Positions 17,999 through 43,779 of a stretch of 64,000 bases of DNA are shown here, piece by piece. Numbering within the stretch: position 1 is the stretch's first letter; the number at the start of each line of letters is the position of its first letter. The translations under genes were made by a program, and so were the position numbers. Source of the stretch: Schmidtea polychroa. Lineage: Eukaryota. The notes beneath the pieces were generated by a model. That model was not told the origin of the DNA. It saw only the letters and a list, made by a program, of their open reading frames with translations, and made no database searches. Where the stretch lies: the NCBI GenBank assembly GCA_044892525.1, contig CM097886.1, positions 73,904,001 to 73,968,000 on the forward strand, written 5' to 3'.

Positions 17999-19084
17999 AT
18001 GAATCCGGATCATAGAAAATTGTTAAAAGTAAATCATTTTTATTTACTGATTCATCTCAATATTTCAAATGAGCCAAATCTTATTTCTATTCTTAATAAT
18101 TTTGGTATCCTATCACAAAAGCATGTTGATGATATTAATTCACAAATTTCTCCTATTAAAATGATAGACAAATTTTTATCTATATTACCTAAGCGTGGAT
18201 CTAAAGCTTTTGATAAATTTATTGAAGCCTTAAAACAATCTCAACAGGAATATATTGCTGAAAAGCTTAATCTGTGTGCTGGTGTTCCTGTTGATTTAGT
18301 TCCTATTTCTCCTGTTGATACTACGGACAATTTGATCGACAATAGAAGGTTAAATAATACTAATCGGTTAATATTGTTGATGAATAATTATAATTTTGGT
18401 AAGGATGATGTCAACCGAATTGGTTCAGAAAAAGATGTAGAACAACTGAAATATTTTTTTAATGAATTAGGCTACAAATTGTTTGATAATAAAACTTTTG
18501 AGGATTTAAATTCTAATGAAATGATTGAAGTAATACAAAAATTTGCATCATATATAGTTGATAATTCTATTAATAGCGTTGTTATAATTATAATGTCTCA
18601 TGGAAAGAATAAAAGAGTATGTGGCATCGATGAACATTTTGTAGATCTTCATCTTATATACAAAATTTTGTCTCATAAAACCGAAAACATATTTAAATTA
18701 ATTATATTTTCTTGTTGTCGTGGAGAAACGGCTTCTTTAGCATCTGGGCTAGTGAATGAATCAAATGAACATCTATCAGATTCCATGTCGATAAATGATT
18801 TAATACAAAAAGATCGATATGATGAATATTCCTGGCGGTTTCAAAATCATATCCCGAAAAATGCAGTTATTCTTTATAGTACACAAGAGAATTATCAATC
18901 TCATCGGGAAACCTCAGGGACAATTTTCATTCAGGCATTATTGTCAATATTCAAAGCTCATTACAAAACTAAATCGTTGCGGGAAATGGTTATAATGATA
19001 AGATCAGAAATGAAACGACTTTTTCCGAAGTATGATCAATGGCCGGACATTAAAGAAAACTATTTTGTAAATTTTTATCTTTGA
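17999..19084 (+). CDS. Intronless CARD-containing initiator-type caspase (361 aa)
   Basis: N-terminal CARD (LSILPKRGSKAFDKFIEAL), NRIGSEKD, catalytic IIMSHG and IFSCCRG, and small-subunit SHRETSGTIFIQAL. ATG start and TGA stop. Confidence 0.9.
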   Translation: MNPDHRKLLKVNHFYLLIHLNISNEPNLISILNNFGILSQKHVDDINSQISPIKMIDKFLSILPKRGSKAFDKFIEALKQSQQEYIAEKLNLCAGVPVDLVPISPVDTTDNLIDNRRLNNTNRLILLMNNYNFGKDDVNRIGSEKDVEQLKYFFNELGYKLFDNKTFEDLNSNEMIEVIQKFASYIVDNSINSVVIIIMSHGKNKRVCGIDEHFVDLHLIYKILSHKTENIFKLIIFSCCRGETASLASGLVNESNEHLSDSMSINDLIQKDRYDEYSWRFQNHIPKNAVILYSTQENYQSHRETSGTIFIQALLSIFKAHYKTKSLREMVIMIRSEMKRLFPKYDQWPDIKENYFVNFYL

Positions 19085-19786
19085 CAAAATTTTCAATTGG
19101 TTTTTTATTTAAATTTTTTTATAAATTATACGTTCAAAGAAGCGCTAGTGAAATTATTGGTAGAATAAATGTTTGGAATGACGTGCCATTCAATTCAATC
19201 AATTTTGGTTAATTTGCAATGTCAAGAGTTCGTAATTGCAGCTGGTTCACAGATATTTGGTTATGTCAATCGTTAGGTGACACATTCTTAAGATAAAATC
19301 TTCAATCTCGAATTGTAAATATTGAAATTATGAAAAAAATTCTAAACATTAAAGTTTTAAAACTAACATTTTTAGAAAATATTTTAATTTTAAAATTTGA
19401 TTTTATTAAAAATGGATAATTTTGATTAAGCAGGAAAATTTTAAAACAGAAATAAACTTTTAAAAAATATGATATCTGATTTTTTAGATATAAACTGAAG
19501 CTGACAATCTAATTGCAGCTAGCGTTAGCAATAAACTATTGCAAAGTAAGGCGAATTTAGAATAACATTATTTACATATTTAAAAAATCTTTATATAATA
19601 AAAATAGAATAGTGCATATTTTAATTGATTTCCATTCGACTACACTATTGCTGTAAAGATAAAATATGTTATGTTTTTAGTAACGACGTCAGAAATGCTC
19701 TAAGAAACATTTAAATGAAACAGCAGTCCGAACTAAAAATAATGCATATTTATTAATAATAGACTTGTTAATAAATTTTTGAGCAA

Positions 19787-20333
19787 GAGTATCTTACCAT
19801 TTTAATAAAACAAATCAAGAATGATTTCGGTTTTTGACCAACAAACAATTACAGCTTTCGCATATTACAGAACACTGATAAAAAAGTTTTTGTTGGGACA
19901 TTTCCCTAGTAAGACCATTACGGTCATGCATTCATTTTAATATATACTTCCCTAAAATTCCGACAGCAGTTACAATGAGTTATGGAGGGTAGGTAAGCTA
20001 ATAATCATGCGTTTAGGGATGAGCAATGAAAAATCTATGAGTGACCCTAGAAAATTTAGGCAACACGTCCACTGGTCGCCTACAGTAGTTCAAAGTTTCA
20101 AGAAAAGTTAACGATGGTCAGTTTAGAAAAAACAGAATAAAAAATCAAGTAAAATAAAGTTTTAATCAAATTATTAAATTATAAACATTTATAAAATTGA
20201 ACAAGAAATTTTAATTAAAATTTGGCGTCTGAACATGAGTATCTTACCATATTATCAAAACAAATAAAGAATGATTTCGGTTTTTGACCAACAAACAATT
20301 ACAGCTTTCGCATATTACAGAACACTGATAAAA
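19787..20333 (+). repeat. 97-bp direct repeat (19787-19883 and 20237-20333) upstream of TSR3
   Basis: gagtatcttaccat...gaacactgataaaa occurs twice at an offset of 450 bp, with a few mismatches. Confidence 0.85.
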
Positions 20334-20628: not shown

Positions 20629-21536
20629 ATGAACAAAAAAGGTTATAATAAAAAAGGCAATAAAAGTTACAAGAACCAACGTAATCAAAATAGAGATTTC
20701 AGACAATTTACTAATGGACATTCGACTGATGAAGGTATTTAATTTAATAGATTTATAATTTTTTAAATTTCTATGATTTAGAAAATAATGAAAATGAAAG
20801 TGAAAATATAAAATTGGCAATGTGGGATTTAGAACAGTGCAATTCGAAGATTTGTAGTGGAAGAAAACTTGTTCGATTAGGACGAGTCAAAATACTAAAA
20901 ATGAATGAAACATTTAATGGAATAGTTTTAGCTCCCGATGCAACTAAATGTATTGACCCGGAAATTGATTTAGAAATAATGAAAAAAAGTGGTTTGGCAG
21001 TTGTTGATTGCAGTTGGGCCCAAGTCACTACTACAGATTTTCGCAAATTGAAATATAAACACGCTCGATTATTGCCTTATTTATTGGCTGCTAATCCTGT
21101 GAATTACGGTAAACCCAGCAAATTGAATTGTGCGGAAGCATTGGCGGGATTTTTAGCAATTTTCAACCTACGCGAACAAGCTGAAGATTTGATGAATTGT
21201 TTCGGTTGGGGTCACAGTTTCATGGAATTAAACGAATCCCTCTTAGACGCATATTCTCAATGCAATACCACAACTGACGTATTGAAATGCCAAGATGAAT
21301 TACTGGATACGATGGATCAGGAAATAGAGGACCACAAAGCCCAAAAATCTCTGACATACGACGATGTTTATGCCGAACTCGATAGAGAATTGAAATCGGA
21401 ATCCGAGGAGGAACAAATCAAAGAATCAGAAATCGATCCGGAATTGAAAATCGCAGATCTCAATATAAAAGAATGCGATCACAACTCCAAAACGGAAACC
21501 GCTCGAGTTCTCACAGATGCCGACATTGTACTTTAA
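20629..21536 (+). CDS. TSR3: TSR3-only truncated copy 1 (18S rRNA aminocarboxypropyltransferase domain; exons 20629-20734 and 20782-21536; 286 aa)
   Basis: LAMWDL..C..K.CSGRKL, VVDCSW, LPYLLAANPVNYGKPSKLNCAEALA and FGWGHSF motifs. ATG at 20629, 47-bp GT-AG intron, ends DADIVL*. Confidence 0.85.
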
Positions 21537-21599
21537 TTTGATTGAAACATGATTTTATTGAATTTATCCTTTCTTTTCGATATTAGCACTAAATATCTA

Positions 21600-23800
21600 T
21601 TTACACACTGAAATTTGTAAACGATTTATTTGAGCTATTTGGATATTCAATTGTGGTATTGCAGTCTCCATTATCAGAACGTAATTGTTCATTTGAACTT
21701 GACATATCGATTGAATGCATGTTATGCGATTTGACGACGAGTAAGAGTATTAGCAACAGCTTTACAAGATTTAATATTTGTAATGTGCATTCGATATGTA
21801 GGTGAAGCATTTCGTTAATCCATAAATTGATTTAAAAGATTGAGATGTTTAAAAAAATGTAATCTATTTGTATATTAAAACAATGTATTTTAATTTAACA
21901 AAGTATTTGCAATTAAACTATTAAATTAATATATTTGTTAACTGAAAGTCAAATGCATTCCAATAGCTTCCAATAAGTAAGCGGAGTGTAGGTATGCTAC
22001 CTGACAGTGAACCCTGCTTGATTGGTCCCTAGTGAGGCTGTCTATAAGAGGTTTGTGATCAATGAAGATTGTGAATTTTCTACCTTAGCATAGTGATTTT
22101 CTGTTGAATGCGCTGTACTTTGACATTGCTAGAGAAAAGTTGTAATCAGTGTGTCACGTGTTGTGTCGAAACAATTCTTTTTCTTTCCTTTGTTCAGTGA
22201 TGAAAGAGGCGCCATTATGTGTAATACATCTTTTATGAATCTTTGACAGAAATTGGCTATTTTCAAATAGCTGTGGATTACATCAAGGCGTTCGAGAAAA
22301 GATTCGTAACTTGTAAATGAGAATATGTGTCCAAGGAATCTGACTGGTTTTTAAAAAACATTGCATTTATTTACCTTGATCTGTAAATTACGACGGTTTA
22401 ATATGTCAAGAATCGTGTGCAGATCTTTGGTGTGGGCGTCGTGGTCGAGTGTTGCTATGAATCTATCGTCCAGGTATGCAAAATTGTGTCCATGAAGCGT
22501 TGGTAGGACTAAGCTGCGTTTCTTATGCGTAAAGGCATAAACATGTATTCGATTTTTCCAAATGGTGTGGTGACGGCAACTTTTGGAACATCATCGATAT
22601 AGATGGGAAACTGGTGATAGGCTTTCAAGAAGTCGAAAATATGGGGGATTGTGAAAAGCGTGTTATTAGATCTTTGATAAGTGACATTGTTTATGATGTT
22701 TGAATTGATTGAATTGACTGTAGTCGCCTCACAGCCTGAGTGAACGGTCTTTCTCTGTGACTACGTGGATTGGTGAACGTTATTGTGATAAAGAACAACG
22801 TATAATACCTGCATTCTCTAGGCTGATAAATTCGGCTTTGCCTGGGTCGAGTTTGATGGGTGGGAGAGATCTATGTCGGTTGTGTTGTGGATGTAATTAG
22901 TCGACATGGTTGTAGGTGGTGAGGTTTAGGTATGTGGTTGATATTATTTCGATCATGTTGTGCATTGGCTCTGTAATAACCGACATGTGTTTATTGCGTC
23001 CAGCCTTGGCAGTATATTGGATAGAGCTGAGTTGGGTCGAAATCGAGTTAAAAAATAAGCGAGAACCTCGAATCATTATCAAAAATTCAGAGGAGATCCG
23101 TAAAAAGAATAATATTAACTTTCTAATTGTTTTTGAAAGAAATAAAACTTTTCGTTATTTTATCATCAATTTATTCGTTGAGTTTATCGTAGATGGTCAT
23201 ATTAAACATAAATCGGACAAATACAACAATTTCGTAGAATAATTAATTTATTATAAATATTATTTTAAAAATCGAAACAAATAAGAATAAATTAAGTAAG
23301 AATAGATCAGAACCAGTAAATGTCAAGTCATACTGAGTATAAGACGGAAAATTTTTACGAACGATAAATTTTTATTTAATACTCTTACTATTTAACCATT
23401 TAATAGTTAGTACGAATATCAACTGCGCTTCAAGTTGAGTTAAAACAAAATAATTTTGTGCAGTATGGATCCTATGGAAAAGTTTCACCAGAACGTTGCG
23501 CGATATAACTCAGAAGAAGCCCGTCAAGCTGATAGGGTTAAGTCTGTGGTCTGAAAGTGTTGGAGGCAAACTATAACAGGAAATCGAAACAGTCGAAAGT
23601 CATGAGTCGAGGATCAGGAGTTTATTGACGGTCTCAAGATCACGATTTAAGAGCAAACTCAGGAAATTACAGAGCTTCGGGCTTGCAGAAGCAGGCCGAG
23701 TGTTATCATATTCAGAAACCGAATTATTTCCGGTTATAACGGTGCTCATCTCCAGAATTCCGATCCTCGTTAAAATAGCCATAGTAATTTAAGATCCAAA
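21600..23800 (-). mobile_element. Degenerate Ty3/Gypsy gag-pol relic (unit 1)
   Basis: Minus-strand fragments: gag-like AILTRIGILEMS; RT LENAGIIR..SPIHVVTEKD, LKAYHQFPI.DDVPKVAVTTPFG, YLDD; RNase H GRKFTIFIDHKPL and AVANTLTR. Many stops and frameshifts. Confidence 0.8.
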
Positions 23801-24589
23801 TATTTTTTGAACGTAGAATTAATGGTCAGATATTTGATTAATCAATGACCACGTAAAATTTCTGGTTAAATAGGTAAATTAAGTGCTAAATTATTAAATT
23901 AAACCTAGGCCCCACAAGTTCTAAAGAAAGAAAATCAGAGAATCAAGGACAGGTCAGAATACAAAGAACTTATTGCACATTGATTTAAATATTTATGATG
24001 ATTTTTTAATTATATTTTGTATTTTATTTGTAGCTAAATGGCTTGTTATATTTCATAATTATTTTGATTGATTTTCATTAGTTTGAGTAAATTTAAACAA
24101 TTAATTAAATTTGAAGGTTTCTTCACTAAGAGGTAGTCATATTAAATTCGATAACTGGCGGACTATATATCAATCAAAATGATGTGCCAATTTTTCATTT
24201 GAGGACAAAGAGAATTTATAGTCCTAGAAAAATTTGACTTAGAAGATAAATTTGAGTAAATATTCAATTTGATGTGACTGTAGCAAATAAATAATTGTGA
24301 AATATGAGCATCTACAATATACAGTGAAGATTAGGGAAAGGAAACTTCATAAAAAGCAACTTTTCACAAAAATAAACTTTTTGTGATTCCAATTTAAATT
24401 TTAATTCACAAAAACTAACTCTGGATTTTTTTTTATTTTTTATGTTGTAAAATCCTTAAATAATAAAAAAATTAATTTGTCAATAACTTGAACCGTTTTT
24501 AAATCCATAAAAAATTAATAATTCACTGTTGATGTAGATATAAAAATTAAAATAATTATATAATTATTATTTATTTATTATTAAAATCT

Positions 24590-25695
24590 GTGAATAAAAA
24601 CTATCTGATAATGATACAAACGTACCTGGATTTATCGCGAGGTTTAAAAATCAGTTTGAAGAATGTACAATGTACCCAGAACAAATATACAATGCTGATG
24701 AAACCGGGATTGATTTTCAAAAATATTAATATGAAAACTTTAGTGACTGCAGAAGAAAAGACTGCACCAGGTAGGAAAAATAGTAAGGAACAGATAACTG
24801 TAATGTCTTTTGTTAATGTGACTGGTCATCATAAATTACCATTGATGGTAAAAGGCGATCAAAACATCCACGTTCTTTTAAAAATGTGAATTTGCTAATA
24901 TAAATTACCGATCATCGAAAAATGCATGGCAAACCAGAAAACGTTTTAAAGAATGGTTTCATAAAATATTTGTACAAGAAGTAAAAAACAATTTGGAACG
25001 GAAAAAAATTGCCATCGAAAGCCATTTTATTGTTAGATAATGCCAGCAGTCACTGCTTTGGAGAACAAATGGAGAATAACAGTTATGTTTTCCCACCAAA
25101 GACTACATTAATATTGCAACCACTTGATCAAAATATTTTAAAATCGTTAAAAACTTTGTATCGCAAGAAACTTTTAATCAATTTAATGTCAAGGAATGAT
25201 GACAATTTAGTTGAAGCCCTAAAATCTATTACATTAAAGGATGTTGTTTTTATGCTCATTGAAACATGGGATAAGGTCAAAATTCAAATGATAAAAAATG
25301 GCTTTAAACATCTTTTCGGTTCAGTTGATGAAAAAAATTTTAATTTAAAATTAAATCATTTTTCGGATGTAGACGATGCTCCAGTAGTAGAAATTTACCG
25401 TCTTGTAATTCCAGAAAATAACATAAATGATAATCAGATAATTGATTGGGCAAGTGGAGGCAATGAAAGTTCTAAATCGCTTATTACTTATGAAGACATA
25501 ATAAAAAATATTAACATCGATGAAGAACATAATAATAATCACAGTTTATGCGTTCACACTGATAAACCTCTCAATGGCATAAATCTTGGTCTAAATTGGG
25601 CCGAAAGTAAATTACTTATTTCTTCGAAAAGTAAGAAAAAACATAATCTTGAAAAAGATTGGGAAGTAATATTTCTAGTTCGAATAAATATTTAA
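24590..25695 (+). mobile_element. Frameshifted Tigger/pogo (DDE_1, CENP-B-like) transposase relic (unit 1)
   Basis: QIYNADETG, KTLVTAEEKTAPGRKNSKEQITV, AILLLDNASSH and TLILQPLDQNILKSLKTLYRKKL, split across frames. Confidence 0.85.
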
Positions 25696-27471
25696 AAATT
25701 GTTATTTGTTATGTATAAATATATATGTATTTTTTTGTTTATAATAATATATGAATTTTTTTATCACATATCTCTCAAAATGTAGTTTTTTATCGATTAA
25801 AGAACAATCGTACACCAAAATTAATAAAAAGAAACATTTTTTTTTAAATTTTGTATCAAAATAGTTTTTTTTATGAATGTTTTTGTATTATTTAAGCGAA
25901 ATAGTGGACAATTCAACGGAAAGCCCTATTATAATATCAAATTTTCAAAATTCTTTGAATTTCGTTTATTGCGAAGGTTTAACATAGGAGTCCAAATTAG
26001 ACGGCAACGACTAAGGGATTGAGTAGCTCATGAAAAGATAAAAGGGCAACAGAAATGAGGTACGACACCTTCCATGGTAACCCATGAATCCAGACGCTCG
26101 ATAAGTCAGGCTCATCTTTTGCTGACAGTCACCCGCTAAATAGAAGTAACAAAGTTGCTTGCGACAGACGTTTAGTGGTTTGTGCGGTTGCTAAGGAGAT
26201 GCGAATGCAGTAAAAGTGATGGCTTTATAAGTTTTTCATACGTAACCCACTACTATGTTATGGGAATAATTGCATTATTTGTGTATAATGTGTTTTTTGA
26301 TAGAATGGTGGATGTTTAAAATAATGTATAAGTGAGTACAACAGTTGATTGATAGAAAAAAGAAATATTCGAATAGGGGATATAGTCGAAAAGCTAATCT
26401 AGTGAGTAAAAGATTGTAGCGATCTAAGAAGCATAAGTCCTTCTATCGAAATCTATGAATCCAAAAGTGAAAACGAATGAAGAGTTATTCCAAAAAGGAA
26501 ACGCAGGGGCTCTATTTTCGACTATAAGATAGTCCTTGTCTATTTTCATTAAATACATTATTCGCAGCAAAAGGCTTTAATTATCACTTTATGATTTTAA
26601 ATAATAAATGCTGCCAGCAAGAAATAATCAATCCAACATGTATACCAGTGCAATTTTGGAAATCTCAAGCTTTTTTGAGACCTAGATCCTAGACCTAGAC
26701 ACATGATATGTTTGAAATAGTCTTGAAAGTTTTTGTTGGGACATTTCCCTAGTAAGACCATTACGGTCATGCATTCATTTTAATATATACTTCCCTAAAA
26801 TTCCGACAGCAGTTACAATGAGTTATGGAGGGTAGGTAAGCTAATAATCATGCGTTTAGGGATGAGCAATGAAAAATCTATGAGTGACCCTAGAAAATTT
26901 AGGCAACACGTCCACTGGTCGCCTACAGTAGTTCAAAGTTTCAAGAAAAGTTAACGATGGTCAGTTTAGAAAAAACAGAATAAAAAATCAAGTAAAATAA
27001 AGTTTTAATCAAATTATTAAATTATAAACATTTATAAAATTGAACAAGAAATTTTAATTAAAATTTGGCGTCTGAACATGAGTATCTTACCATATTATCA
27101 AAACAAATAAAGAATGATTTCGGTTTTTGACCAACAAACAATTACAGCTTTCGCATATTACAGAACACTGATAAAATCATATACTAAATGCACTTTATTA
27201 GTCATCTAACATCGAATCCATTTCAGTATAAAATTTTTATTTTTAACAAAATTGAACTTTAAAATAAACTAATTTTTTATTCCAATTAGATAAATAGCAT
27301 ATTTTAAATGTTTTATGCTAGTTCATACAAACCAACTATAATTGAATATTACCATTCAAATATTACCAAATTCGTAAAACTTGTTTAAATAATATTATTT
27401 AATTAATATTTTAACAATTTTTACCTAATTTATTATTATTTTTTTAATATCGTATATTTAAATTTTAATTC

Positions 27472-28379
27472 ATGAACAAAAAAGGTTATAATAAAAAAGG
27501 CAATAAAAGTTACAAGAACCAACGTAATCAAAATAGAGATTTCAGACAATTTACTAATGGACATTCGACTGATGAAGGTATTTAATTTAATAGATTTATA
27601 ATTTTTTAAATTTCTATGATTTAGAAAATAATGAAAATGAAAGTGAAAATATAAAATTGGCAATGTGGGATTTAGAACAGTGCAATTCGAAGATTTGTAG
27701 TGGAAGAAAACTTGTTCGATTAGGACGAGTCAAAATACTAAAAATGAATGAAACATTTAATGGAATAGTTTTAGCTCCCGATGCAACTAAATGTATTGAC
27801 CCGGAAATTGATTTAGAAATAATGAAAAAAAGTGGTTTGGCAGTTGTTGATTGCAGTTGGGCCCAAGTCACTACTACAGATTTTCGCAAATTGAAATATA
27901 AACACGCTCGATTATTGCCTTATTTATTGGCTGCTAATCCTGTGAATTACGGTAAACCCAGCAAATTGAATTGTGCGGAAGCATTGGCGGGATTTTTAGC
28001 AATTTTCAACCTACGCGAACAAGCTGAAGATTTGATGAATTGTTTCGGTTGGGGTCACAGTTTCATGGAATTAAACGAATCCCTCTTAGACGCATATTCT
28101 CAATGCAATACCACAACTGACGTATTGAAATGCCAAGATGAATTACTGGATACGATGGATCAGGAAATAGAGGACCACAAAGCCCAAAAATCTCTGACAT
28201 ACGACGATGTTTATGCCGAACTCGATAGAGAATTGAAATCGGAATCCGAGGAGGAACAAATCAAAGAATCAGAAATCGATCCGGAATTGAAAATCGCAGA
28301 TCTCAATATAAAAGAATGCGATCACAACTCCAAAACGGAAACCGCTCGAGTTCTCACAGATGCCGACATTGTACTTTAA
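27472..28379 (+). CDS. TSR3: TSR3-only truncated copy 2
   Basis: Same structure as copy 1 at +6,843. Confidence 0.85.
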
Positions 28380-30643: not shown

Positions 30644-31432
30644 TATTTTTTGAACGTAGAATTAATGGTCAGATATTTGATTAATCAATGACCACGTAAA
30701 ATTTCTGGTTAAATAGGTAAATTAAGTGCTAAATTATTAAATTAAACCTAGGCCCCACAAGTTCTAAAGAAAGAAAATCAGAGAATCAAGGACAGGTCAG
30801 AATACAAAGAACTTATTGCACATTGATTTAAATATTTATGATGATTTTTTAATTATATTTTGTATTTTATTTGTAGCTAAATGGCTTGTTATATTTCATA
30901 ATTATTTTGATTGATTTTCATTAGTTTGAGTAAATTTAAACAATTAATTAAATTTGAAGGTTTCTTCACTAAGAGGTAGTCATATTAAATTCGATAACTG
31001 GCGGACTAAATATCAATCAAAATGATGTGCCAATTTTTCATTTGAGGACAAAGAGAATTTATAGTCTTAGAAAAATTTGACTTAGAAGATAAATTTGAGT
31101 AAATATTCAATTTGATGTGACTGTAGCAAATAAATAATTGTGAAATATGAGCATCTACAATATACAGTGAAGATTAGGGAAAGGAAACTTCATAAAAAGC
31201 AACTTTTCACAAAAATAAACTTTTTGTGATTCCAATTTAAATTTTAATTCACAAAAACTAACTCTGGATTTTTTTTTATTTTTTATGTTGTAAAATCCTT
31301 AAATAATAAAAAAATTAATTTGTCAATAACTTGAACCGTTTTTAAATCCATAAAAAATTAATAATTCACTGTTGATGTAGATATAAAAATTAAAATAATT
31401 ATATAATTATTATTTATTTATTATTAAAATCT

Positions 31433-32538
31433 GTGAATAAAAACTATCTGATAATGATACAAACGTACCTGGATTTATCGCGAGGTTTAAAAATCAGTTT
31501 GAAGAATGTACAATGTACCCAGAACAAATATACAATGCTGATGAAACCGGGATTGATTTTCAAAAATATTAATATGAAAACTTTAGTGACTGCAGAAGAA
31601 AAGACTGCACCAGGTAGGAAAAATAGTAAGGAACAGATAACTGTAATGTCTTTTGTTAATGTGACTGGTCATCATAAATTACCATTGATGGTAAAAGGCG
31701 ATCAAAACATCCACGTTCTTTTAAAAATGTGAATTTGCTAATATAAATTACCGATCATCGAAAAATGCATGGCAAACCAGAAAACGTTTTAAAGAATGGT
31801 TTCATAAAATATTTGTACAAGAAGTAAAAAACAATTTGGAACGGAAAAAAATTGCCATCGAAAGCCATTTTATTGTTAGATAATGCCAGCAGTCACTGCT
31901 TTGGAGAACAAATGGAGAATAACAGTTATGTTTTCCCACCAAAGACTACATTAATATTGCAACCACTTGATCAAAATATTTTAAAATCGTTAAAAACTTT
32001 GTATCGCAAGAAACTTTTAATCAATTTAATGTCAAGGAATGATGACAATTTAGTTGAAGCCCTAAAATCTATTACATTAAAGGATGTTGTTTTTATGCTC
32101 ATTGAAACATGGGATAAGGTCAAAATTCAAATGATAAAAAATGGCTTTAAACATCTTTTCGGTTCAGTTGATGAAAAAAATTTTAATTTAAAATTAAATC
32201 ATTTTTCGGATGTAGACGATGCTCCAGTAGTAGAAATTTACCGTCTTGTAATTCCAGAAAATAACATAAATGATAATCAGATAATTGATTGGGCAAGTGG
32301 AGGCAATGAAAGTTCTAAATCGCTTATTACTTATGAAGACATAATAAAAAATATTAACATCGATGAAGAACATAATAATAATCACAGTTTATGCGTTCAC
32401 ACTGATAAACCTCTCAATGGCATAAATCTTGGTCTAAATTGGGCCGAAAGTAAATTACTTATTTCTTCGAAAAGTAAGAAAAAACATAATCTTGAAAAAG
32501 ATTGGGAAGTAATATTTCTAGTTCGAATAAATATTTAA
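31433..32538 (+). mobile_element. Tigger/pogo transposase relic (unit 2)
   Basis: Repeat of 24590-25695 at +6,843. Confidence 0.85.
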
Positions 32539-34314: not shown

Positions 34315-35222
34315 ATGAACAAAAAAGGTTATAATAAAAAAGGCAATAAAAGTTACAAGAACCAACGTAATCAAAATAGAGATTTCAGACAATTTACTAA
34401 TGGACATTCGACTGATGAAGGTATTTAATTTAATAGATTTATAATTTTTTTAATTTCTATGATTTAGAAAATAATGAAAATGAAAGTGAAAATATAAAAT
34501 TGGCAATGTGGGATTTAGAACAGTGCAATTCGAAGATTTGTAGTGGAAGAAAACTTGTTCGATTAGGACGAGTCAAAATACTAAAAATGAATGAAACATT
34601 TAATGGAATAGTTTTAGCTCCCGATGCAACTAAATGTATTGACCCGGAAATTGATTTAGAAATAATGAAAAAAAGTGGTTTGGCAGTTGTTGATTGCAGT
34701 TGGGCCCAAGTCACTACTACAGATTTTCGCAAATTGAAATATAAACACGCTCGATTATTGCCTTATTTATTGGCTGCTAATCCTGTGAATTACGGTAAAC
34801 CCAGCAAATTGAATTGTGCGGAAGCATTGGCGGGATTTTTAGCAATTTTCAACCTACGCGAACAAGCTGAAGATTTGATGAATTGTTTCGGTTGGGGTCA
34901 CAGTTTCATGGAATTAAACGAATCCCTCTTAGACGCATATTCTCAATGCAATACCACAACTGACGTATTGAAATGCCAAGATGAATTACTGGATACGATG
35001 GATCAGGAAATAGAGGACCACAAAGCCCAAAAATCTCTGACATACGACGATGTTTATGCCGAACTCGATAGAGAATTGAAATCGGAATCCGAGGAGGAAC
35101 AAATCAAAGAATCAGAAATCGATCCGGAATTGAAAATCGCAGATCTCAATATAAAAGAATGCGATCACAACTCCAAAACGGAAACCGCTCGAGTTCTCAC
35201 AGATGCCGACATTGTACTTTAA
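34315..35222 (+). CDS. TSR3: TSR3-only truncated copy 3
   Basis: Same structure as copy 1 at +13,686. Confidence 0.85.
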
Positions 35223-41157: not shown

Positions 41158-43411
41158 ATGAACAAAAAAGGTTATAATAAAAAAGGCAATAAAAGTTACA
41201 AGAACCAACGTAATCAAAATAGAGATTTCAGACAATTTACTAATGGACATTCGACTGATGAAGGTATTTAATTTAATAGATTTATAATTTTTTTAATTTC
41301 TATGATTTAGAAAATAATGAAAATGAAAGTGAAAATATAAAATTGGCAATGTGGGATTTAGAACAGTGCAATTCGAAGATTTGTAGTGGAAGAAAACTTG
41401 TTCGATTAGGACGAGTCAAAATACTAAAAATGAATGAAACATTTAATGGAATAGTTTTAGCTCCCGATGCAACTAAATGTATTGACCCGGAAATTGATTT
41501 AGAAATAATGAAAAAAAGTGGTTTGGCAGTTGTTGATTGCAGTTGGGCCCAAGTCACTACTACAGATTTTCGCAAATTGAAATATAAACACGCTCGATTA
41601 TTGCCTTATTTATTGGCTGCTAATCCTGTGAATTACGGTAAACCCAGCAAATTGAATTGTGCGGAAGCATTGGCGGGATTTTTAGCAATTTTCAACCTAC
41701 GCGAACAAGCTGAAGATTTGATGAATTGTTTCGGTTGGGGTCACAGTTTCATGGAATTAAACGAATCCCTCTTAGACGCATATTCTCAATGCAATACCAC
41801 AACTGACGTATTGAAATGCCAAGATGAATTACTGGATACGATGGATCAGGAAATAGAGGACCACAAAGCCCAAAAATCTCTGACATACGACAATGTTTAT
41901 GCCGAACTCGATAGAGAATTGAAATCGGAATCCGAGGAGGAACAAATCAAAGAATCAGAAATCGATCCGGAATTGAAAATCGCAGATCTCAATATAAAAG
42001 AATGCGATCACAACTCCAAAACGGAAACCGCTCGAGTTCTCACAGATGCCGACATTTCCCAACTGGAAACTCAGGAAAAATCGATAATCAAACACGATGA
42101 AACGGAGAAGTTGGAAAAGGAAGCGAAGAAAAACTGGGATTTGTTTTACAAGCGAAATAAAACAAATTTCTTCAAGGATCGCCATTGGCTGAATAGGGAA
42201 TTTGCGGATCTCGAGCTGTTCTACAGCCCCACCAAATCCTCCGATCAAATCGGTGATTCAGATCGAGCTATTCGGATTTTATTGGAATCTGGCTGTGGAG
42301 TCGGTAATTTCATTTTGCCGTTGCTCGATGAGGTGTCGACAGTCGAGGGCAATCGATGCCGATATTTCTGTTGCGATTTCTCTCCGGTTGCCATTTCACT
42401 TCTGGTTCAAGATCCTCGCTACCAATTGGCCAATAGGAATGCGATCGCTCACGCATTCGTTGCAGACCTCACGCATGATCAGCTGACTGCCACTGTTGAC
42501 AATGTCGATCTCGTTACGTGCGTTTTTGTCCTGTCGGCTATTCACCCAGATAAACACGTGTTTGCGTTGCGCAATCTCTTTTCGTGAGTTTTATGTTAAT
42601 TTTTTGATTGGCTTTACTTTCTGCTCAATTTGAGCACTAAATATCAATGTATACATGCACATGAGGTTTGCACATAATTTCTGTTGATTTTGATTGGGAT
42701 ATATTATTGATTATCGATTTTTATAATTTTAGAAATCATTTAAATATGATTTTATTGAATTTATTCTTTCCACTAAATATTGATTTACAACATATATTTA
42801 TGTTGTTTTTGCATTCTTGTTTGATTGGGTTATATTATTTATTATTGTTTTTAATATCGAAATTTCTAATCAATAAAACATCAATCATCAATGAAATAAG
42901 CATTAATTATCGATTTATTACAATTCTACTATATTGTGAGACATGTTCTTTATTGAATTATTTGAATAATTTATTGAATTTAACCTTTCTGCTCAATGTT
43001 TGCACTAAATATCTAGTTAAACTGTTTTCATTTCACTCTAATTTGCCATGTTTGCTCAATATTATCACCAAATATCGATTTATTTATTTATTAGTTATTA
43101 TTTTTAGAGTCATTAAACCTGGGGGTAAATTGTTGTTTCGTGATTATGGACTATACGATCAAGCTCAGTTGAGATTCGGTAGACGGACAAAACTTGCTGA
43201 CAATTGGTATACTCGTCAAGATGGGACGAGAAGTTATTTTTTTTCGAGGGAATATTTGAAAAATATTGTCGAGGAAGCTTTACCAGGAGAAGTTGTTTTC
43301 AAACAATGTGTTTATGTCCAAACGAAAACAGAAAACAAAGCAGAGGGTTTGAGTGTTGATCGAATATTTATTCAAGCTGTTGTCGAACGTTTAACATTTT
43401 CATTTTTGTGA
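41158..43411 (+). CDS. TSR3-METTL6: TSR3-METTL6 fusion gene (exons 41158-41263, 41311-42583, 43108-43411; 560 aa)
   Basis: The TSR3 domain continues in frame through an acidic linker into METTL6 motifs (ARVLT, EAKKNWDLFYKRNKTNFFKDRHW, LLESGCGVGN, CDFS, FVLSAIHP). The intron TC|GTGAGT...TTTAG|A restores the frame into VIKPGGKLLFRDYGLYD and RQDGTRSYFF. Spliced length is 1,683 nt. Confidence 0.88.
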
Positions 43412-43779
43412 AAAATATAATTTATTATAATAAAATCAAAAAATTATAAAACAATAATTTATAATTGAATAGTTATAGTCCTTTGTTAATACAGTTAAAG
43501 ATTTATTGTTAGTGTTGAAATATTCAAATAAAAATAGTTATGGAAGCAGTGAGAAGCTCCCTCCACTCTATTTTCTCAAAACAAACTTTACTATTTTCAA
43601 AAATACAGTACATGTATATAATTAATTTATAGCTATGATTTGTAAGAATTATTTTTGGCTCTTATTCTTTTATTAAACTTTTGATATTACTTATATTATA
43701 TAATCTATGAAACCATTTTGTGTTTATCCAATGAATGATAAATCTTTATTTGAGCTCAAAAGAATCAAAGAATCATTTA

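What the first reader, a model, noticed from the sequence alone, without database searches (positions are those of the whole stretch)
41158..43411. In-frame fusion of two SAM-dependent RNA-modification enzymes, TSR3 (18S rRNA acp transferase) and METTL6 (tRNA m3C32 methyltransferase)
Seen: a continuous exon (41311-42583) encodes the full TSR3 domain, an acidic linker with no Met after MDQEI, and the METTL6 N-terminus; a canonical intron then leads to the METTL6 C-terminus. Established: TSR3 and METTL6 are separate genes in human; TSR3 uses SAM as acp donor on 18S rRNA, and METTL6 methylates C32 of tRNA-Ser. I know of no described fusion. Inference: a bifunctional enzyme that could couple small-subunit maturation with tRNA modification.
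Basis: partly seen in the sequence, partly recalled or inferred. Interest (0 to 1): 0.75.

Follow-up and report, generated by a model that had tools for sequence, protein, structure and literature searches.

The report
Flatworm TSR3–METTL6 fusion gene
This planarian gene really does join a ribosomal-RNA-modifying enzyme (TSR3) and a transfer-RNA methyltransferase (METTL6) into one 560-residue protein. The same fusion is present in every flatworm class in the databases searched, appears in no paper I could search, and nothing here shows that the two activities are coupled.

Summary
**Observation: confirmed.** A three-exon gene (41158-41263, 41311-42583, 43108-43411, + strand) encodes 560 aa:
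- a complete TSR3 (Fer4_RLI plus Ribo_biogen_C, E 3e-47);
- an acidic tail of about 65 aa;
- a complete METTL6-type m3C methyltransferase, homologous to human METTL6 from its residue 10.

Catalytic and SAM-binding motifs of both halves are intact. The last Met is residue 213, so METTL6 has no AUG of its own.

**The fusion is not peculiar to this genome.**
- It occurs, in the same order, in triclads, Macrostomum, a monogenean, cestodes and trematodes.
- An exhaustive scan of 1.84 billion representatives found about seven fused clusters. All the named ones are flatworms.
- A spliced trematode mRNA contig carries the whole fused ORF.
- Intron 2 sits at the same codon in planarian and fluke.
- A processed retrocopy on another chromosome of this genome lacks intron 2 exactly.

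**Other points.**
- No paper describing the fusion was found.
- Functional coupling is untested.
- The repeat boundary at 42056/42057 belongs to a 6,843-bp tandem array. Its three upstream units encode TSR3-only ORFs of 286 aa. The scan noted this separately (s1-217391).

**Verdict:** real, ancient, unpublished fusion. Moderate interest.

The parts
41158..41263 (+). Exon 1: ATG plus 35 codons of a basic N-terminal tail (one extra base completes a split codon).
   Evidence: P0001 has the same N-terminus and the same exon 1/2 join.
41264..41310 (+). Intron 1, 47 nt, GT..AG.
   Evidence: The frame is restored only by this splice.
41311..42583 (+). Exon 2: a single open exon holding TSR3, the acidic tail/linker and the N-terminal two thirds of METTL6.
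41340..41435 (+). Fer4_RLI-like N-terminal element of TSR3.
   Evidence: Pfam PF04068, E 1.3e-8.
41451..41831 (+). TSR3 catalytic domain (Ribo_biogen_C). The DCSWAQ motif at 41535-41552 holds the catalytic Asp (residue 111) and the SAM-binding Trp (residue 114).
   Evidence: PF04034, E 3.2e-47. Alignment to 5ap8 and 5apg. Residue roles come from PMC4872110.
41832..42026 (+). TSR3 C-terminal tail / linker, 33% Asp+Glu. It contains the flatworm-conserved motif LTYDNVYAELDREL at 41880-41921.
   Evidence: The equivalent region of the homologue model is low-confidence.
42027..42583 (+). METTL6 N-terminal part: WDLFYK (42132-42152), FFKDRHW (42168-42188), motif I GCGVGN (42291-42308), CDFS (42372-42383) and VFVLSA (42522-42539).
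   Evidence: phmmer against 8p7b and 7f1e, E about 1e-35. Motif roles come from PMC11479938. Coordinates.
42056..42057 (.). Right-hand end of the 6,843-bp tandem array. It lies nine codons into the METTL6 homology (…TDADI|SQLE…).
   Evidence: P0001 and the L014 contig are continuous across this point.
42584..43107 (+). Intron 2, 524 nt, gtgagt…ttttag, with three copies of a ~75-nt local repeat.
   Evidence: It is exactly absent from retrocopy L006. A fluke and a second triclad have an intron at the same codon.
43108..43411 (+). Exon 3: METTL6 C-terminal part (FRDYG, LRFGR, RQDGT, DRIFIQAV) and the TGA stop.
43429..43434 (+). AATAAA, 18 nt after the stop: the likely poly(A) signal.
   Evidence: The retrocopy's similarity ends here, followed by a short A run.
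20629..21536 (+). Truncated tandem copy 1: exon 1, intron 1 and the TSR3 exon ending …TDADIVL*. The ORF is 286 aa and TSR3-only.
27472..28379 (+). Truncated tandem copy 2 (286-aa TSR3-only ORF).
34315..35222 (+). Truncated tandem copy 3 (286-aa TSR3-only ORF).

Best explanation
**Proposal.** This is the planarian orthologue of a gene fusion that arose once, at or before the common ancestor of rhabditophoran flatworms. It has been kept ever since. One mRNA encodes one polypeptide of 560 aa.

**N-terminal module.** It is a complete TSR3. By homology, TSR3 transfers the 3-amino-3-carboxypropyl group of SAM to the hypermodified pseudouridine of 18S rRNA in late pre-40S particles.

**C-terminal module.** It is a complete METTL6. 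By homology, METTL6 transfers the methyl group of SAM to N3 of C32 in tRNA-Ser.

**Join.** The two modules are connected by TSR3's own acidic, probably disordered tail. I think they most likely act as independent catalytic units. The fusion would then enforce equal, co-regulated expression rather than create a new chemistry.

**Shown:** the gene structure, the domain content, intact motifs, conservation and purifying selection, and a fused mRNA in a fluke.

**Inferred:** both activities, the substrates and the independence of the modules.
For: **Both domains are complete and their key residues are kept**
- TSR3 keeps D111 and W114 in DCSWAQ. These correspond to Vd D70/W73 and Sc E111/W114.
- METTL6 keeps WDLFYK, FFKDRHW, GCGVGN, D391-F392, F441, and the Y, R, R and R-x-F residues of the C32 pocket.

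**The fusion is obligate in this species**
- There is no Met after residue 213.
- The own genome has no other TSR3 locus and no other intact METTL6.

**The fusion is ancient and widespread in flatworms**
- The same architecture occurs in more than 25 flatworm species of five major groups.
- Only flatworm clusters among 1.84 billion representatives have it.
- Macrostomum encodes it in one exon.
- A second triclad has the same single exon and the same donor site.

**Both halves are constrained**
- Non-synonymous against synonymous differences (pN/pS) versus that triclad are 0.11/0.92 for TSR3 and 0.26/0.83 for METTL6.

**Transcript-level support**
- A fluke Logan contig (L009) carries the whole 628-aa ORF. 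It maps to the F. buski gene in exon blocks spread over 17 kb, including an intron inside the linker.
- Retrocopy L006 in this genome carries the exact exon 2/3 join.

**A single origin is plausible**
- Flatworm METTL6 domains form one clan, SH-aLRT 96.
- In the TSR3 tree, 13 of 14 flatworm sequences cluster.

**The modules look separate**
- The AlphaFold model of homologue P0017 has two confident domains and a linker with pLDDT below 50.
Against:
- The human METTL6 residues F32 (contact with SerRS, the seryl-tRNA synthetase) and H195 (contact with i6A37) are D and Q here and in P0001. Other flatworms keep F/Y and mostly H. The SerRS dependence may therefore differ.
- The full-length copy carries N where the three truncated copies, and P0001, carry D within the conserved linker motif.
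- Cleavage in the linker, or TSR3-only products from the truncated copies, would make the proteins effectively separate.
- No enzymatic activity was tested.
Confidence: 0.8

Rival explanations
1. The gene is fused, but the cell ends up with separate enzymes. This could happen by proteolysis in the acidic linker, by transcripts ending early, or (in this genome) by the three TSR3-only copies. On this reading the fusion matters only for co-transcription.
For: - The linker is long, acidic and predicted to be disordered.
- Three near-identical truncated copies share the same 746-bp upstream region and encode 286-aa TSR3-only ORFs.
- Schistosome annotations list shorter isoforms.
Against: - METTL6 has no AUG of its own, so it can only be made as part of the long protein.
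- The shorter schistosome isoforms all start with TSR3 and end at conserved intron positions. They look like intron retention. None is METTL6 alone.
- The fused frame has been kept across the phylum, with a conserved linker motif.
- Expression of the truncated copies is unknown.
Confidence: 0.12
2. One of the two domains has lost catalysis. It would then serve only as a targeting or regulatory module for the other.
For: - F32 and H195 of human METTL6 are not conserved in this species.
- Flatworm sequences are fast-evolving (long branches).
Against: - All SAM-binding and catalytic residues checked are intact in both halves, and invariant or nearly so in 25 flatworm fusions.
- The own genome has no other TSR3 locus or intact METTL6 to supply the missing activity.
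- pN is far below pS in both halves.
Confidence: 0.05
3. The fusion is an artefact. The assembly would have wrongly joined two genes at the repeat boundary 42056/42057, or the ORF would be a read-through of neighbouring genes.
For: - The end of a 100%-identical tandem array falls exactly in the linker/METTL6 boundary region.
- The array could not be checked against reads.
Against: - The sequence across 42056/42057 is continuous and homologous in P0001, in the independent triclad contig L014, and in every other flatworm fusion.
- The derived junction is the other one, R1|X, in the truncated copies.
- The fusion lies within single exons in three triclads and in Macrostomum.
- A fused spliced mRNA exists in a fluke.
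Confidence: 0.03

Closest known systems
Predicted TSR3–METTL6 fusion proteins of other flatworms. Examples: Fasciolopsis buski KAA0198326.1; Schistosoma japonicum KAH8870839.1; Anoplocephala perfoliata KAM7539203.1; Echinococcus multilocularis 'methyltransferase protein 6'; Macrostomum lignano BOX15_Mlig016718g1.
   Same: - Same domain order.
- Same conserved linker motif.
- Same intron position before …KPGG….
- 36-43% identity over the whole of exon 2, and 85% to triclad P0001.
   Different: - Linker length varies from about 18 to 144 aa.
- This species also has three truncated TSR3-only tandem copies.
- The database names mention only one of the two halves. No paper was found that describes the fusion.
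TSR3 (yeast Tsr3, human TSR3; archaeal structures 5AP8 and 5APG): the stand-alone 18S rRNA acp transferase.
   Same: - Fer4_RLI plus Ribo_biogen_C domains.
- The catalytic D/E and the SAM-binding W.
- An acidic C-terminal tail, as in other eukaryotic TSR3 proteins.
   Different: - Here the acidic tail runs on into a second enzyme.
- The flatworm tail has an SY(A/S)D(V/I)YAELD motif. A pattern search did not find it in 18 unfused TSR3 proteins.
Human METTL6 (7F1E, 8P7B): the tRNA-Ser m3C32 methyltransferase that works in complex with SerRS.
   Same: - Class I fold.
- The m3C-specific RNA-binding elements WDLFYK and FFKDRHW.
- SAM-binding and C32-pocket residues.
- All best named hits are METTL6.
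   Different: - The N-terminus is not free. It follows TSR3, from about human residue 10.
- F32 (SerRS contact) is D, and H195 is Q, in this species.
Yeast Trm140/Abp140: an m3C32 methyltransferase made as a fusion with an unrelated actin-binding N-terminal part. Recalled from memory, not checked here.
   Same: An m3C32 methyltransferase of the same family tolerates a large foreign N-terminal fusion.
   Different: - The partner is not an RNA-modifying enzyme.
- The yeast fusion depends on a programmed frameshift. This one is a plain open frame.

Membership tests
TSR3 (18S rRNA aminocarboxypropyl transferase) | Ribo_biogen_C domain above Pfam's gathering score, preceded by the Fer4_RLI-like element. 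| tested here: met
   PF04034 scores 159.9 bits against a cut-off of 29.9. PF04068 scores 34.9 against 23.
TSR3 (18S rRNA aminocarboxypropyl transferase) | A catalytic acidic residue and, three residues on, the conserved SAM-binding Trp (Vd D70/W73, Sc E111/W114). | tested here: met
   D111 and W114 in VVDCSWAQ align to the DxSW of 5ap8 and 5apg. They are nearly invariant in 25 flatworm fusions.
TSR3 (18S rRNA aminocarboxypropyl transferase) | acp transfer to m1Ψ of 18S rRNA. | not testable with these tools
   This needs primer extension or mass spectrometry after knock-down.
METTL6 / m3C32 tRNA methyltransferases (IPR026113) | Class I SAM motifs: motif I GCGxGN, the acidic-loop D-F, and the motif IV F. 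| tested here: met
   GCGVGN, CDFS and VFVLSA are present and align to human METTL6.
METTL6 / m3C32 tRNA methyltransferases (IPR026113) | The m3C-specific RNA-binding domain motifs WDLFYK and FFKDRHW, plus the C32-pocket residues Y190, R213 and F261. | tested here: met
   Both motifs are identical to the human ones. FRDYG, RQDGT and R-I-F are conserved.
METTL6 / m3C32 tRNA methyltransferases (IPR026113) | Orthology to METTL6 rather than to METTL2/8. | tested here: met
   - Every named protein among the best 120 hits is METTL6, at 42-51% identity.
- The only PDB hits are METTL6.
- The genome's other m3C-type gene (L007) is 31% identical.
- No rooted tree with METTL2/8 was made.
METTL6 / m3C32 tRNA methyltransferases (IPR026113) | The SerRS interface (human F32) and specificity for tRNA-Ser. 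| tested here: inconclusive
   F32 aligns to D in this species and in P0001. It aligns to F or Y in the other flatworms that could be aligned there. Binding and substrate were not testable.
Flatworm TSR3–METTL6 fusion | Both domains in one open frame, TSR3 first, with no internal start for METTL6. | tested here: met
Flatworm TSR3–METTL6 fusion | Shared descent with the other flatworm fusions. | tested here: met
   - METTL6 domains form one clan, SH-aLRT 96.
- In the TSR3 tree, 13 of 14 cluster (SH-aLRT 90) and Macrostomum is unresolved.
- The linker motif and the intron position are shared.

The most novel reading that the evidence does not exclude
The fusion is a 'Rosetta stone' for a real functional link. 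The idea is that tethering METTL6 to TSR3 couples the last cytoplasmic step of 40S maturation (acp on the P-site pseudouridine) to m3C32 methylation of tRNA-Ser. It might do so by bringing SerRS/tRNA-Ser to nascent 40S, or by making one activity depend on the other. If so, a similar but non-covalent link might exist in animals where the genes are separate.
Probability: 0.08. Interest if true: 0.8.

Novelty: new variant of a known kind. Interest (0 to 1): 0.5.

Why it matters
- Both enzymes are well studied as separate proteins. A fusion kept throughout a whole phylum has three consequences.
  - It is a clean molecular synapomorphy for (at least) rhabditophoran flatworms.
  - It raises the testable question of whether the rRNA acp modification and tRNA-Ser m3C32 are functionally linked.
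  - It gives parasitic flatworms (Schistosoma, Echinococcus, Fasciola) an enzyme architecture that their hosts lack.
- Planarians allow easy RNAi, so both marks could be measured after a single knock-down.
- In this genome, the partial tandem duplication that recreates TSR3-only ORFs offers a natural look at a fusion being undone.
- If the modules simply work side by side, which I think most likely, the finding is a tidy evolutionary note rather than new biochemistry.

Tried and rejected
**Reads**
There is therefore no RNA or DNA read evidence for this species.
The same applies to their identical copies at 24554-24592 and 31397-31435. Local scripts worked beside them.

**Look-ups that found nothing**
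- Exact-protein look-ups of this genome's own ORFs, full-length and truncated, found nothing on record.
- Look-ups of two Schistosoma proteins, P0031 and P0014, also found nothing.

**Origin by read-through of neighbouring genes**
- TSR3 is not next to METTL6 in the annelid Dimorphilus or the rotifer Adineta.
- Only these two genomes were looked at.

**Literature**
- Five searches combined TSR3, METTL6 and flatworm terms.
- They returned only general reviews or unrelated papers.

**Origin of the 5.2-kb spacer X of the tandem array**
- Only its first ~80 nt resemble anything nearby, namely the ~75-nt repeat of intron 2.
- It also holds a DDE_1 transposase remnant.
- I could not reconstruct how the array arose.

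**Misassembly at 42056/42057** was considered and rejected (see the rival explanations).

**Synonymous sites** against the second triclad are saturated. Only pN and pS are given, not a corrected dN/dS.

Full report
**1. The observation**

The stretch holds a three-exon gene on the + strand.
- The ATG is at 41158. Exon 1 ends at 41263.
- A 47-nt GT..AG intron follows.
- Exon 2 (41311-42583) is one uninterrupted open frame.
- Intron 2 is a 524-nt gtgagt…ttttag intron.
- Exon 3 (43108-43411) ends in TGA.

Spliced, this gives 1,683 nt and a protein of 560 aa.

Domain content:
- Pfam places Fer4_RLI and Ribo_biogen_C (E 3.2e-47) in the first 173 residues of exon 2. It places a class I methyltransferase domain at residues 324-421, continued in exon 3.
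- Against solved structures, the N-terminal part matches archaeal Tsr3 (5ap8, 5apg).
- The part from exon-2 residue 239 onward matches human METTL6 (8p7b, 7f1e, E about 1e-35). The match begins at human residue 10.

**2. Is the gene model right, and is the junction real?**

Four independent lines support it.
- *A close relative.* Triclad protein P0001 is 85% identical. It has the same N-terminus, the same exon 1/2 join, and a continuous sequence through the linker into METTL6.
- *A second triclad.* Genomic contig L014 holds TSR3, a much longer acidic linker and METTL6 in one exon. That exon ends at a GTAAGT donor at the same codon as intron 2 here.
- *A retrocopy in this genome.* Chromosome C3 carries a 437-bp, 94%-identical, 5'-truncated copy of the spliced message (L006).
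  - It runs seamlessly across the exon 2/3 join, with intron 2 exactly missing.
  - It stops at the AATAAA 18 nt after the stop codon, followed by a short A run.
  - It is broken by frameshifts and stops.
  - It is a processed pseudogene, and so a fossil of the predicted mRNA.
- *A fused mRNA in a fluke.* A 2,641-nt Logan contig (L009) carries a complete 628-aa fused ORF.
  - It maps onto the Fasciolopsis buski gene in at least six blocks spread over 17 kb.
  - One intron lies inside the linker. Another lies at …RNIAS|VLKPGG…, the position of intron 2 in the planarian.
  - So a single spliced mRNA for the fused protein exists in at least one flatworm.

I worked beside those places and their identical copies afterwards.

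**3. Distribution**

- The word-indexed search returned the same architecture (PF04068 + PF04034 + methyltransferase, 500-634 aa) from several groups:
  - trematodes (Opisthorchis, Paragonimus, Fasciola, Schistosoma and others);
  - cestodes (Echinococcus, Taenia, Hymenolepis, Mesocestoides, Spirometra, Schistocephalus);
  - the monogenean Cichlidogyrus;
  - the early-branching Macrostomum lignano, where the whole 634-aa protein is one exon.
- Hits from annelids, molluscs, rotifers, a bryozoan, a nemertean, arthropods, echinoderms and vertebrates are single-domain proteins of 250-400 aa.
- The exhaustive HMMER scan of 1.84 billion representatives found about seven clusters with both halves.
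  - All sit at the top of the list.
  - Those with names are flatworms. The unnamed ones group with flatworms.
- Flatworm METTL6 domains form one clan (SH-aLRT 96).
- In the TSR3 tree, 13 of 14 flatworm sequences cluster. Macrostomum is left unresolved beside a long-branched kinetoplastid.

A single ancient origin is the simplest reading. How far below Rhabditophora it reaches is unknown.

**4. State of the two enzymes**

- *TSR3.* The catalytic acid and the SAM-binding tryptophan are present as D111 and W114 in VVDCSWAQ. They correspond to D70/W73 in V. distributa and E111/W114 in yeast (PMC4872110).
- *METTL6.* The following are all present, and invariant or nearly so in 25 flatworm fusions. 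Residue roles come from PMC11479938.
  - WDLFYK;
  - the substrate-binding loop FFKDRHW;
  - motif I;
  - the D-F of the acidic loop;
  - the F at the motif IV position;
  - the Y, R, R and R-x-F residues of the C32 pocket.
- *Two human residues differ in this species and in P0001.* F32, which touches SerRS (the seryl-tRNA synthetase), is D. H195, near i6A37, is Q. Most other flatworms keep F/Y and H.
- *Selection.* Against the second triclad, synonymous sites are saturated (pS 0.8-0.9). Non-synonymous differences are 0.11 per site in TSR3 and 0.26 in METTL6. Both halves are therefore under purifying selection.
- *No back-up genes.* The genome has no TSR3 domain outside this locus. It has no other intact METTL6, only the retrocopy and a 31%-identical METTL2/8-like gene.

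**5. Anatomy of the join**

- Unfused eukaryotic TSR3 proteins already end in a long acidic tail.
- In flatworms this tail runs straight into METTL6 at about its tenth residue. It is 18 to about 144 aa long and 20-50% acidic.
- The tail carries a motif, SY(A/S)D(V/I)YAELD, conserved across the phylum. A pattern search did not find it in 18 unfused TSR3 proteins.
- An AlphaFold model of homologue P0017 has two confident domains, residues 33-206 and 271-561. Most of 207-270 has pLDDT below 50, and pTM is 0.51.

I therefore favour two independent modules on a flexible tether.

**6. The repeat boundary**

- Position 42056/42057 is the right-hand end of a tandem array with a 6,843-bp period. The array starts at 19883 and holds three full units plus 1,645 bp. 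Unit-to-unit differences are 7, 1 and 1 bases.
- Each full unit contains:
  - 746 bp of upstream sequence;
  - exon 1 and intron 1;
  - the TSR3 exon up to …TDADI;
  - a 5.2-kb spacer carrying a DDE_1 transposase remnant.
- The reading frame then ends as …TDADIVL*, giving three TSR3-only ORFs of 286 aa.
- The comparative data show that the join to METTL6 is the ancestral one and the join to the spacer is the derived one.
I had found it independently through.
- Whether the copies are expressed, and whether the copy number is right, needs reads.

**7. Known or new?**

- Public databases hold dozens of these predicted proteins. They are named after one half or the other.
- Five literature searches found no paper that mentions the fusion. 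Subscription journals are not covered.
- I class it as a new variant of known kinds. It is real and ancient. The most likely reading is simple co-expression of two ordinary activities.
- Coupling of 40S maturation with tRNA-Ser modification stays an untested possibility, at about 8%.

Noticed in passing
window 19883-42056: A tandem array with a 6,843-bp period, holding three full units plus 1,645 bp. Units differ by 7, 1 and 1 bases. Each full unit ends the TSR3 exon at …TDADIVL*, giving a 286-aa TSR3-only ORF. The left flank (19780-19882) is a 94% copy of 103 bp inside the unit. I could not reconstruct the origin of the array. The scan noted it separately as s1-217391.
   Followed up: partly
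L006 (G000 C3, about 41,287,150-41,287,610, minus strand of the locus 1174-1607): A processed, 5'-truncated retrocopy of the fusion gene's mRNA. It is 94% identical, lacks intron 2 exactly, contains frameshifts and stops, and ends at the AATAAA followed by a short A run.
   Followed up: yes
window 21528-26725 (and the copies one and two periods on): The spacer X of the array. Its first ~80 nt resemble the ~75-nt repeat that occurs three times in intron 2 and nowhere else in the genome at this sensitivity. It also holds a DDE_1 (pogo/Tigger-type) transposase remnant at 25009-25695 and a G-rich segment around 22000-24000.
   Followed up: partly
window 41892 versus 21363, 28206 and 35049: This is the only coding difference between the copies. 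The full-length fusion copy has N in the conserved linker motif (TYDNVYAELD). The three truncated copies and the related species keep D.
   Followed up: no
window 17999-19084 (+): An intronless ORF of 361 aa with CARD and caspase (Peptidase_C14) domains, just left of the array.
   Followed up: partly
L007 (G000 C1, about 196,516,769): A second m3C-type methyltransferase gene with introns, 31% identical to the METTL6 part. It is probably the METTL2/8 orthologue.
   Followed up: partly
L012 8331-11051 (Dimorphilus gyrociliatus): In this annelid, TSR3 lies directly downstream of a DTW-domain gene on the same strand. DTW is the family that Pfam lists for tRNA acp3U transferases. So two acp-transferase-type genes sit side by side.
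   Followed up: no
Schistosoma proteins P0031, P0240, P0381, P0382: The annotated shorter isoforms all begin with TSR3 and stop at conserved intron positions (after …RFFK and after …CNV(A/S)). They look like intron retention. None encodes METTL6 alone.
   Followed up: partly
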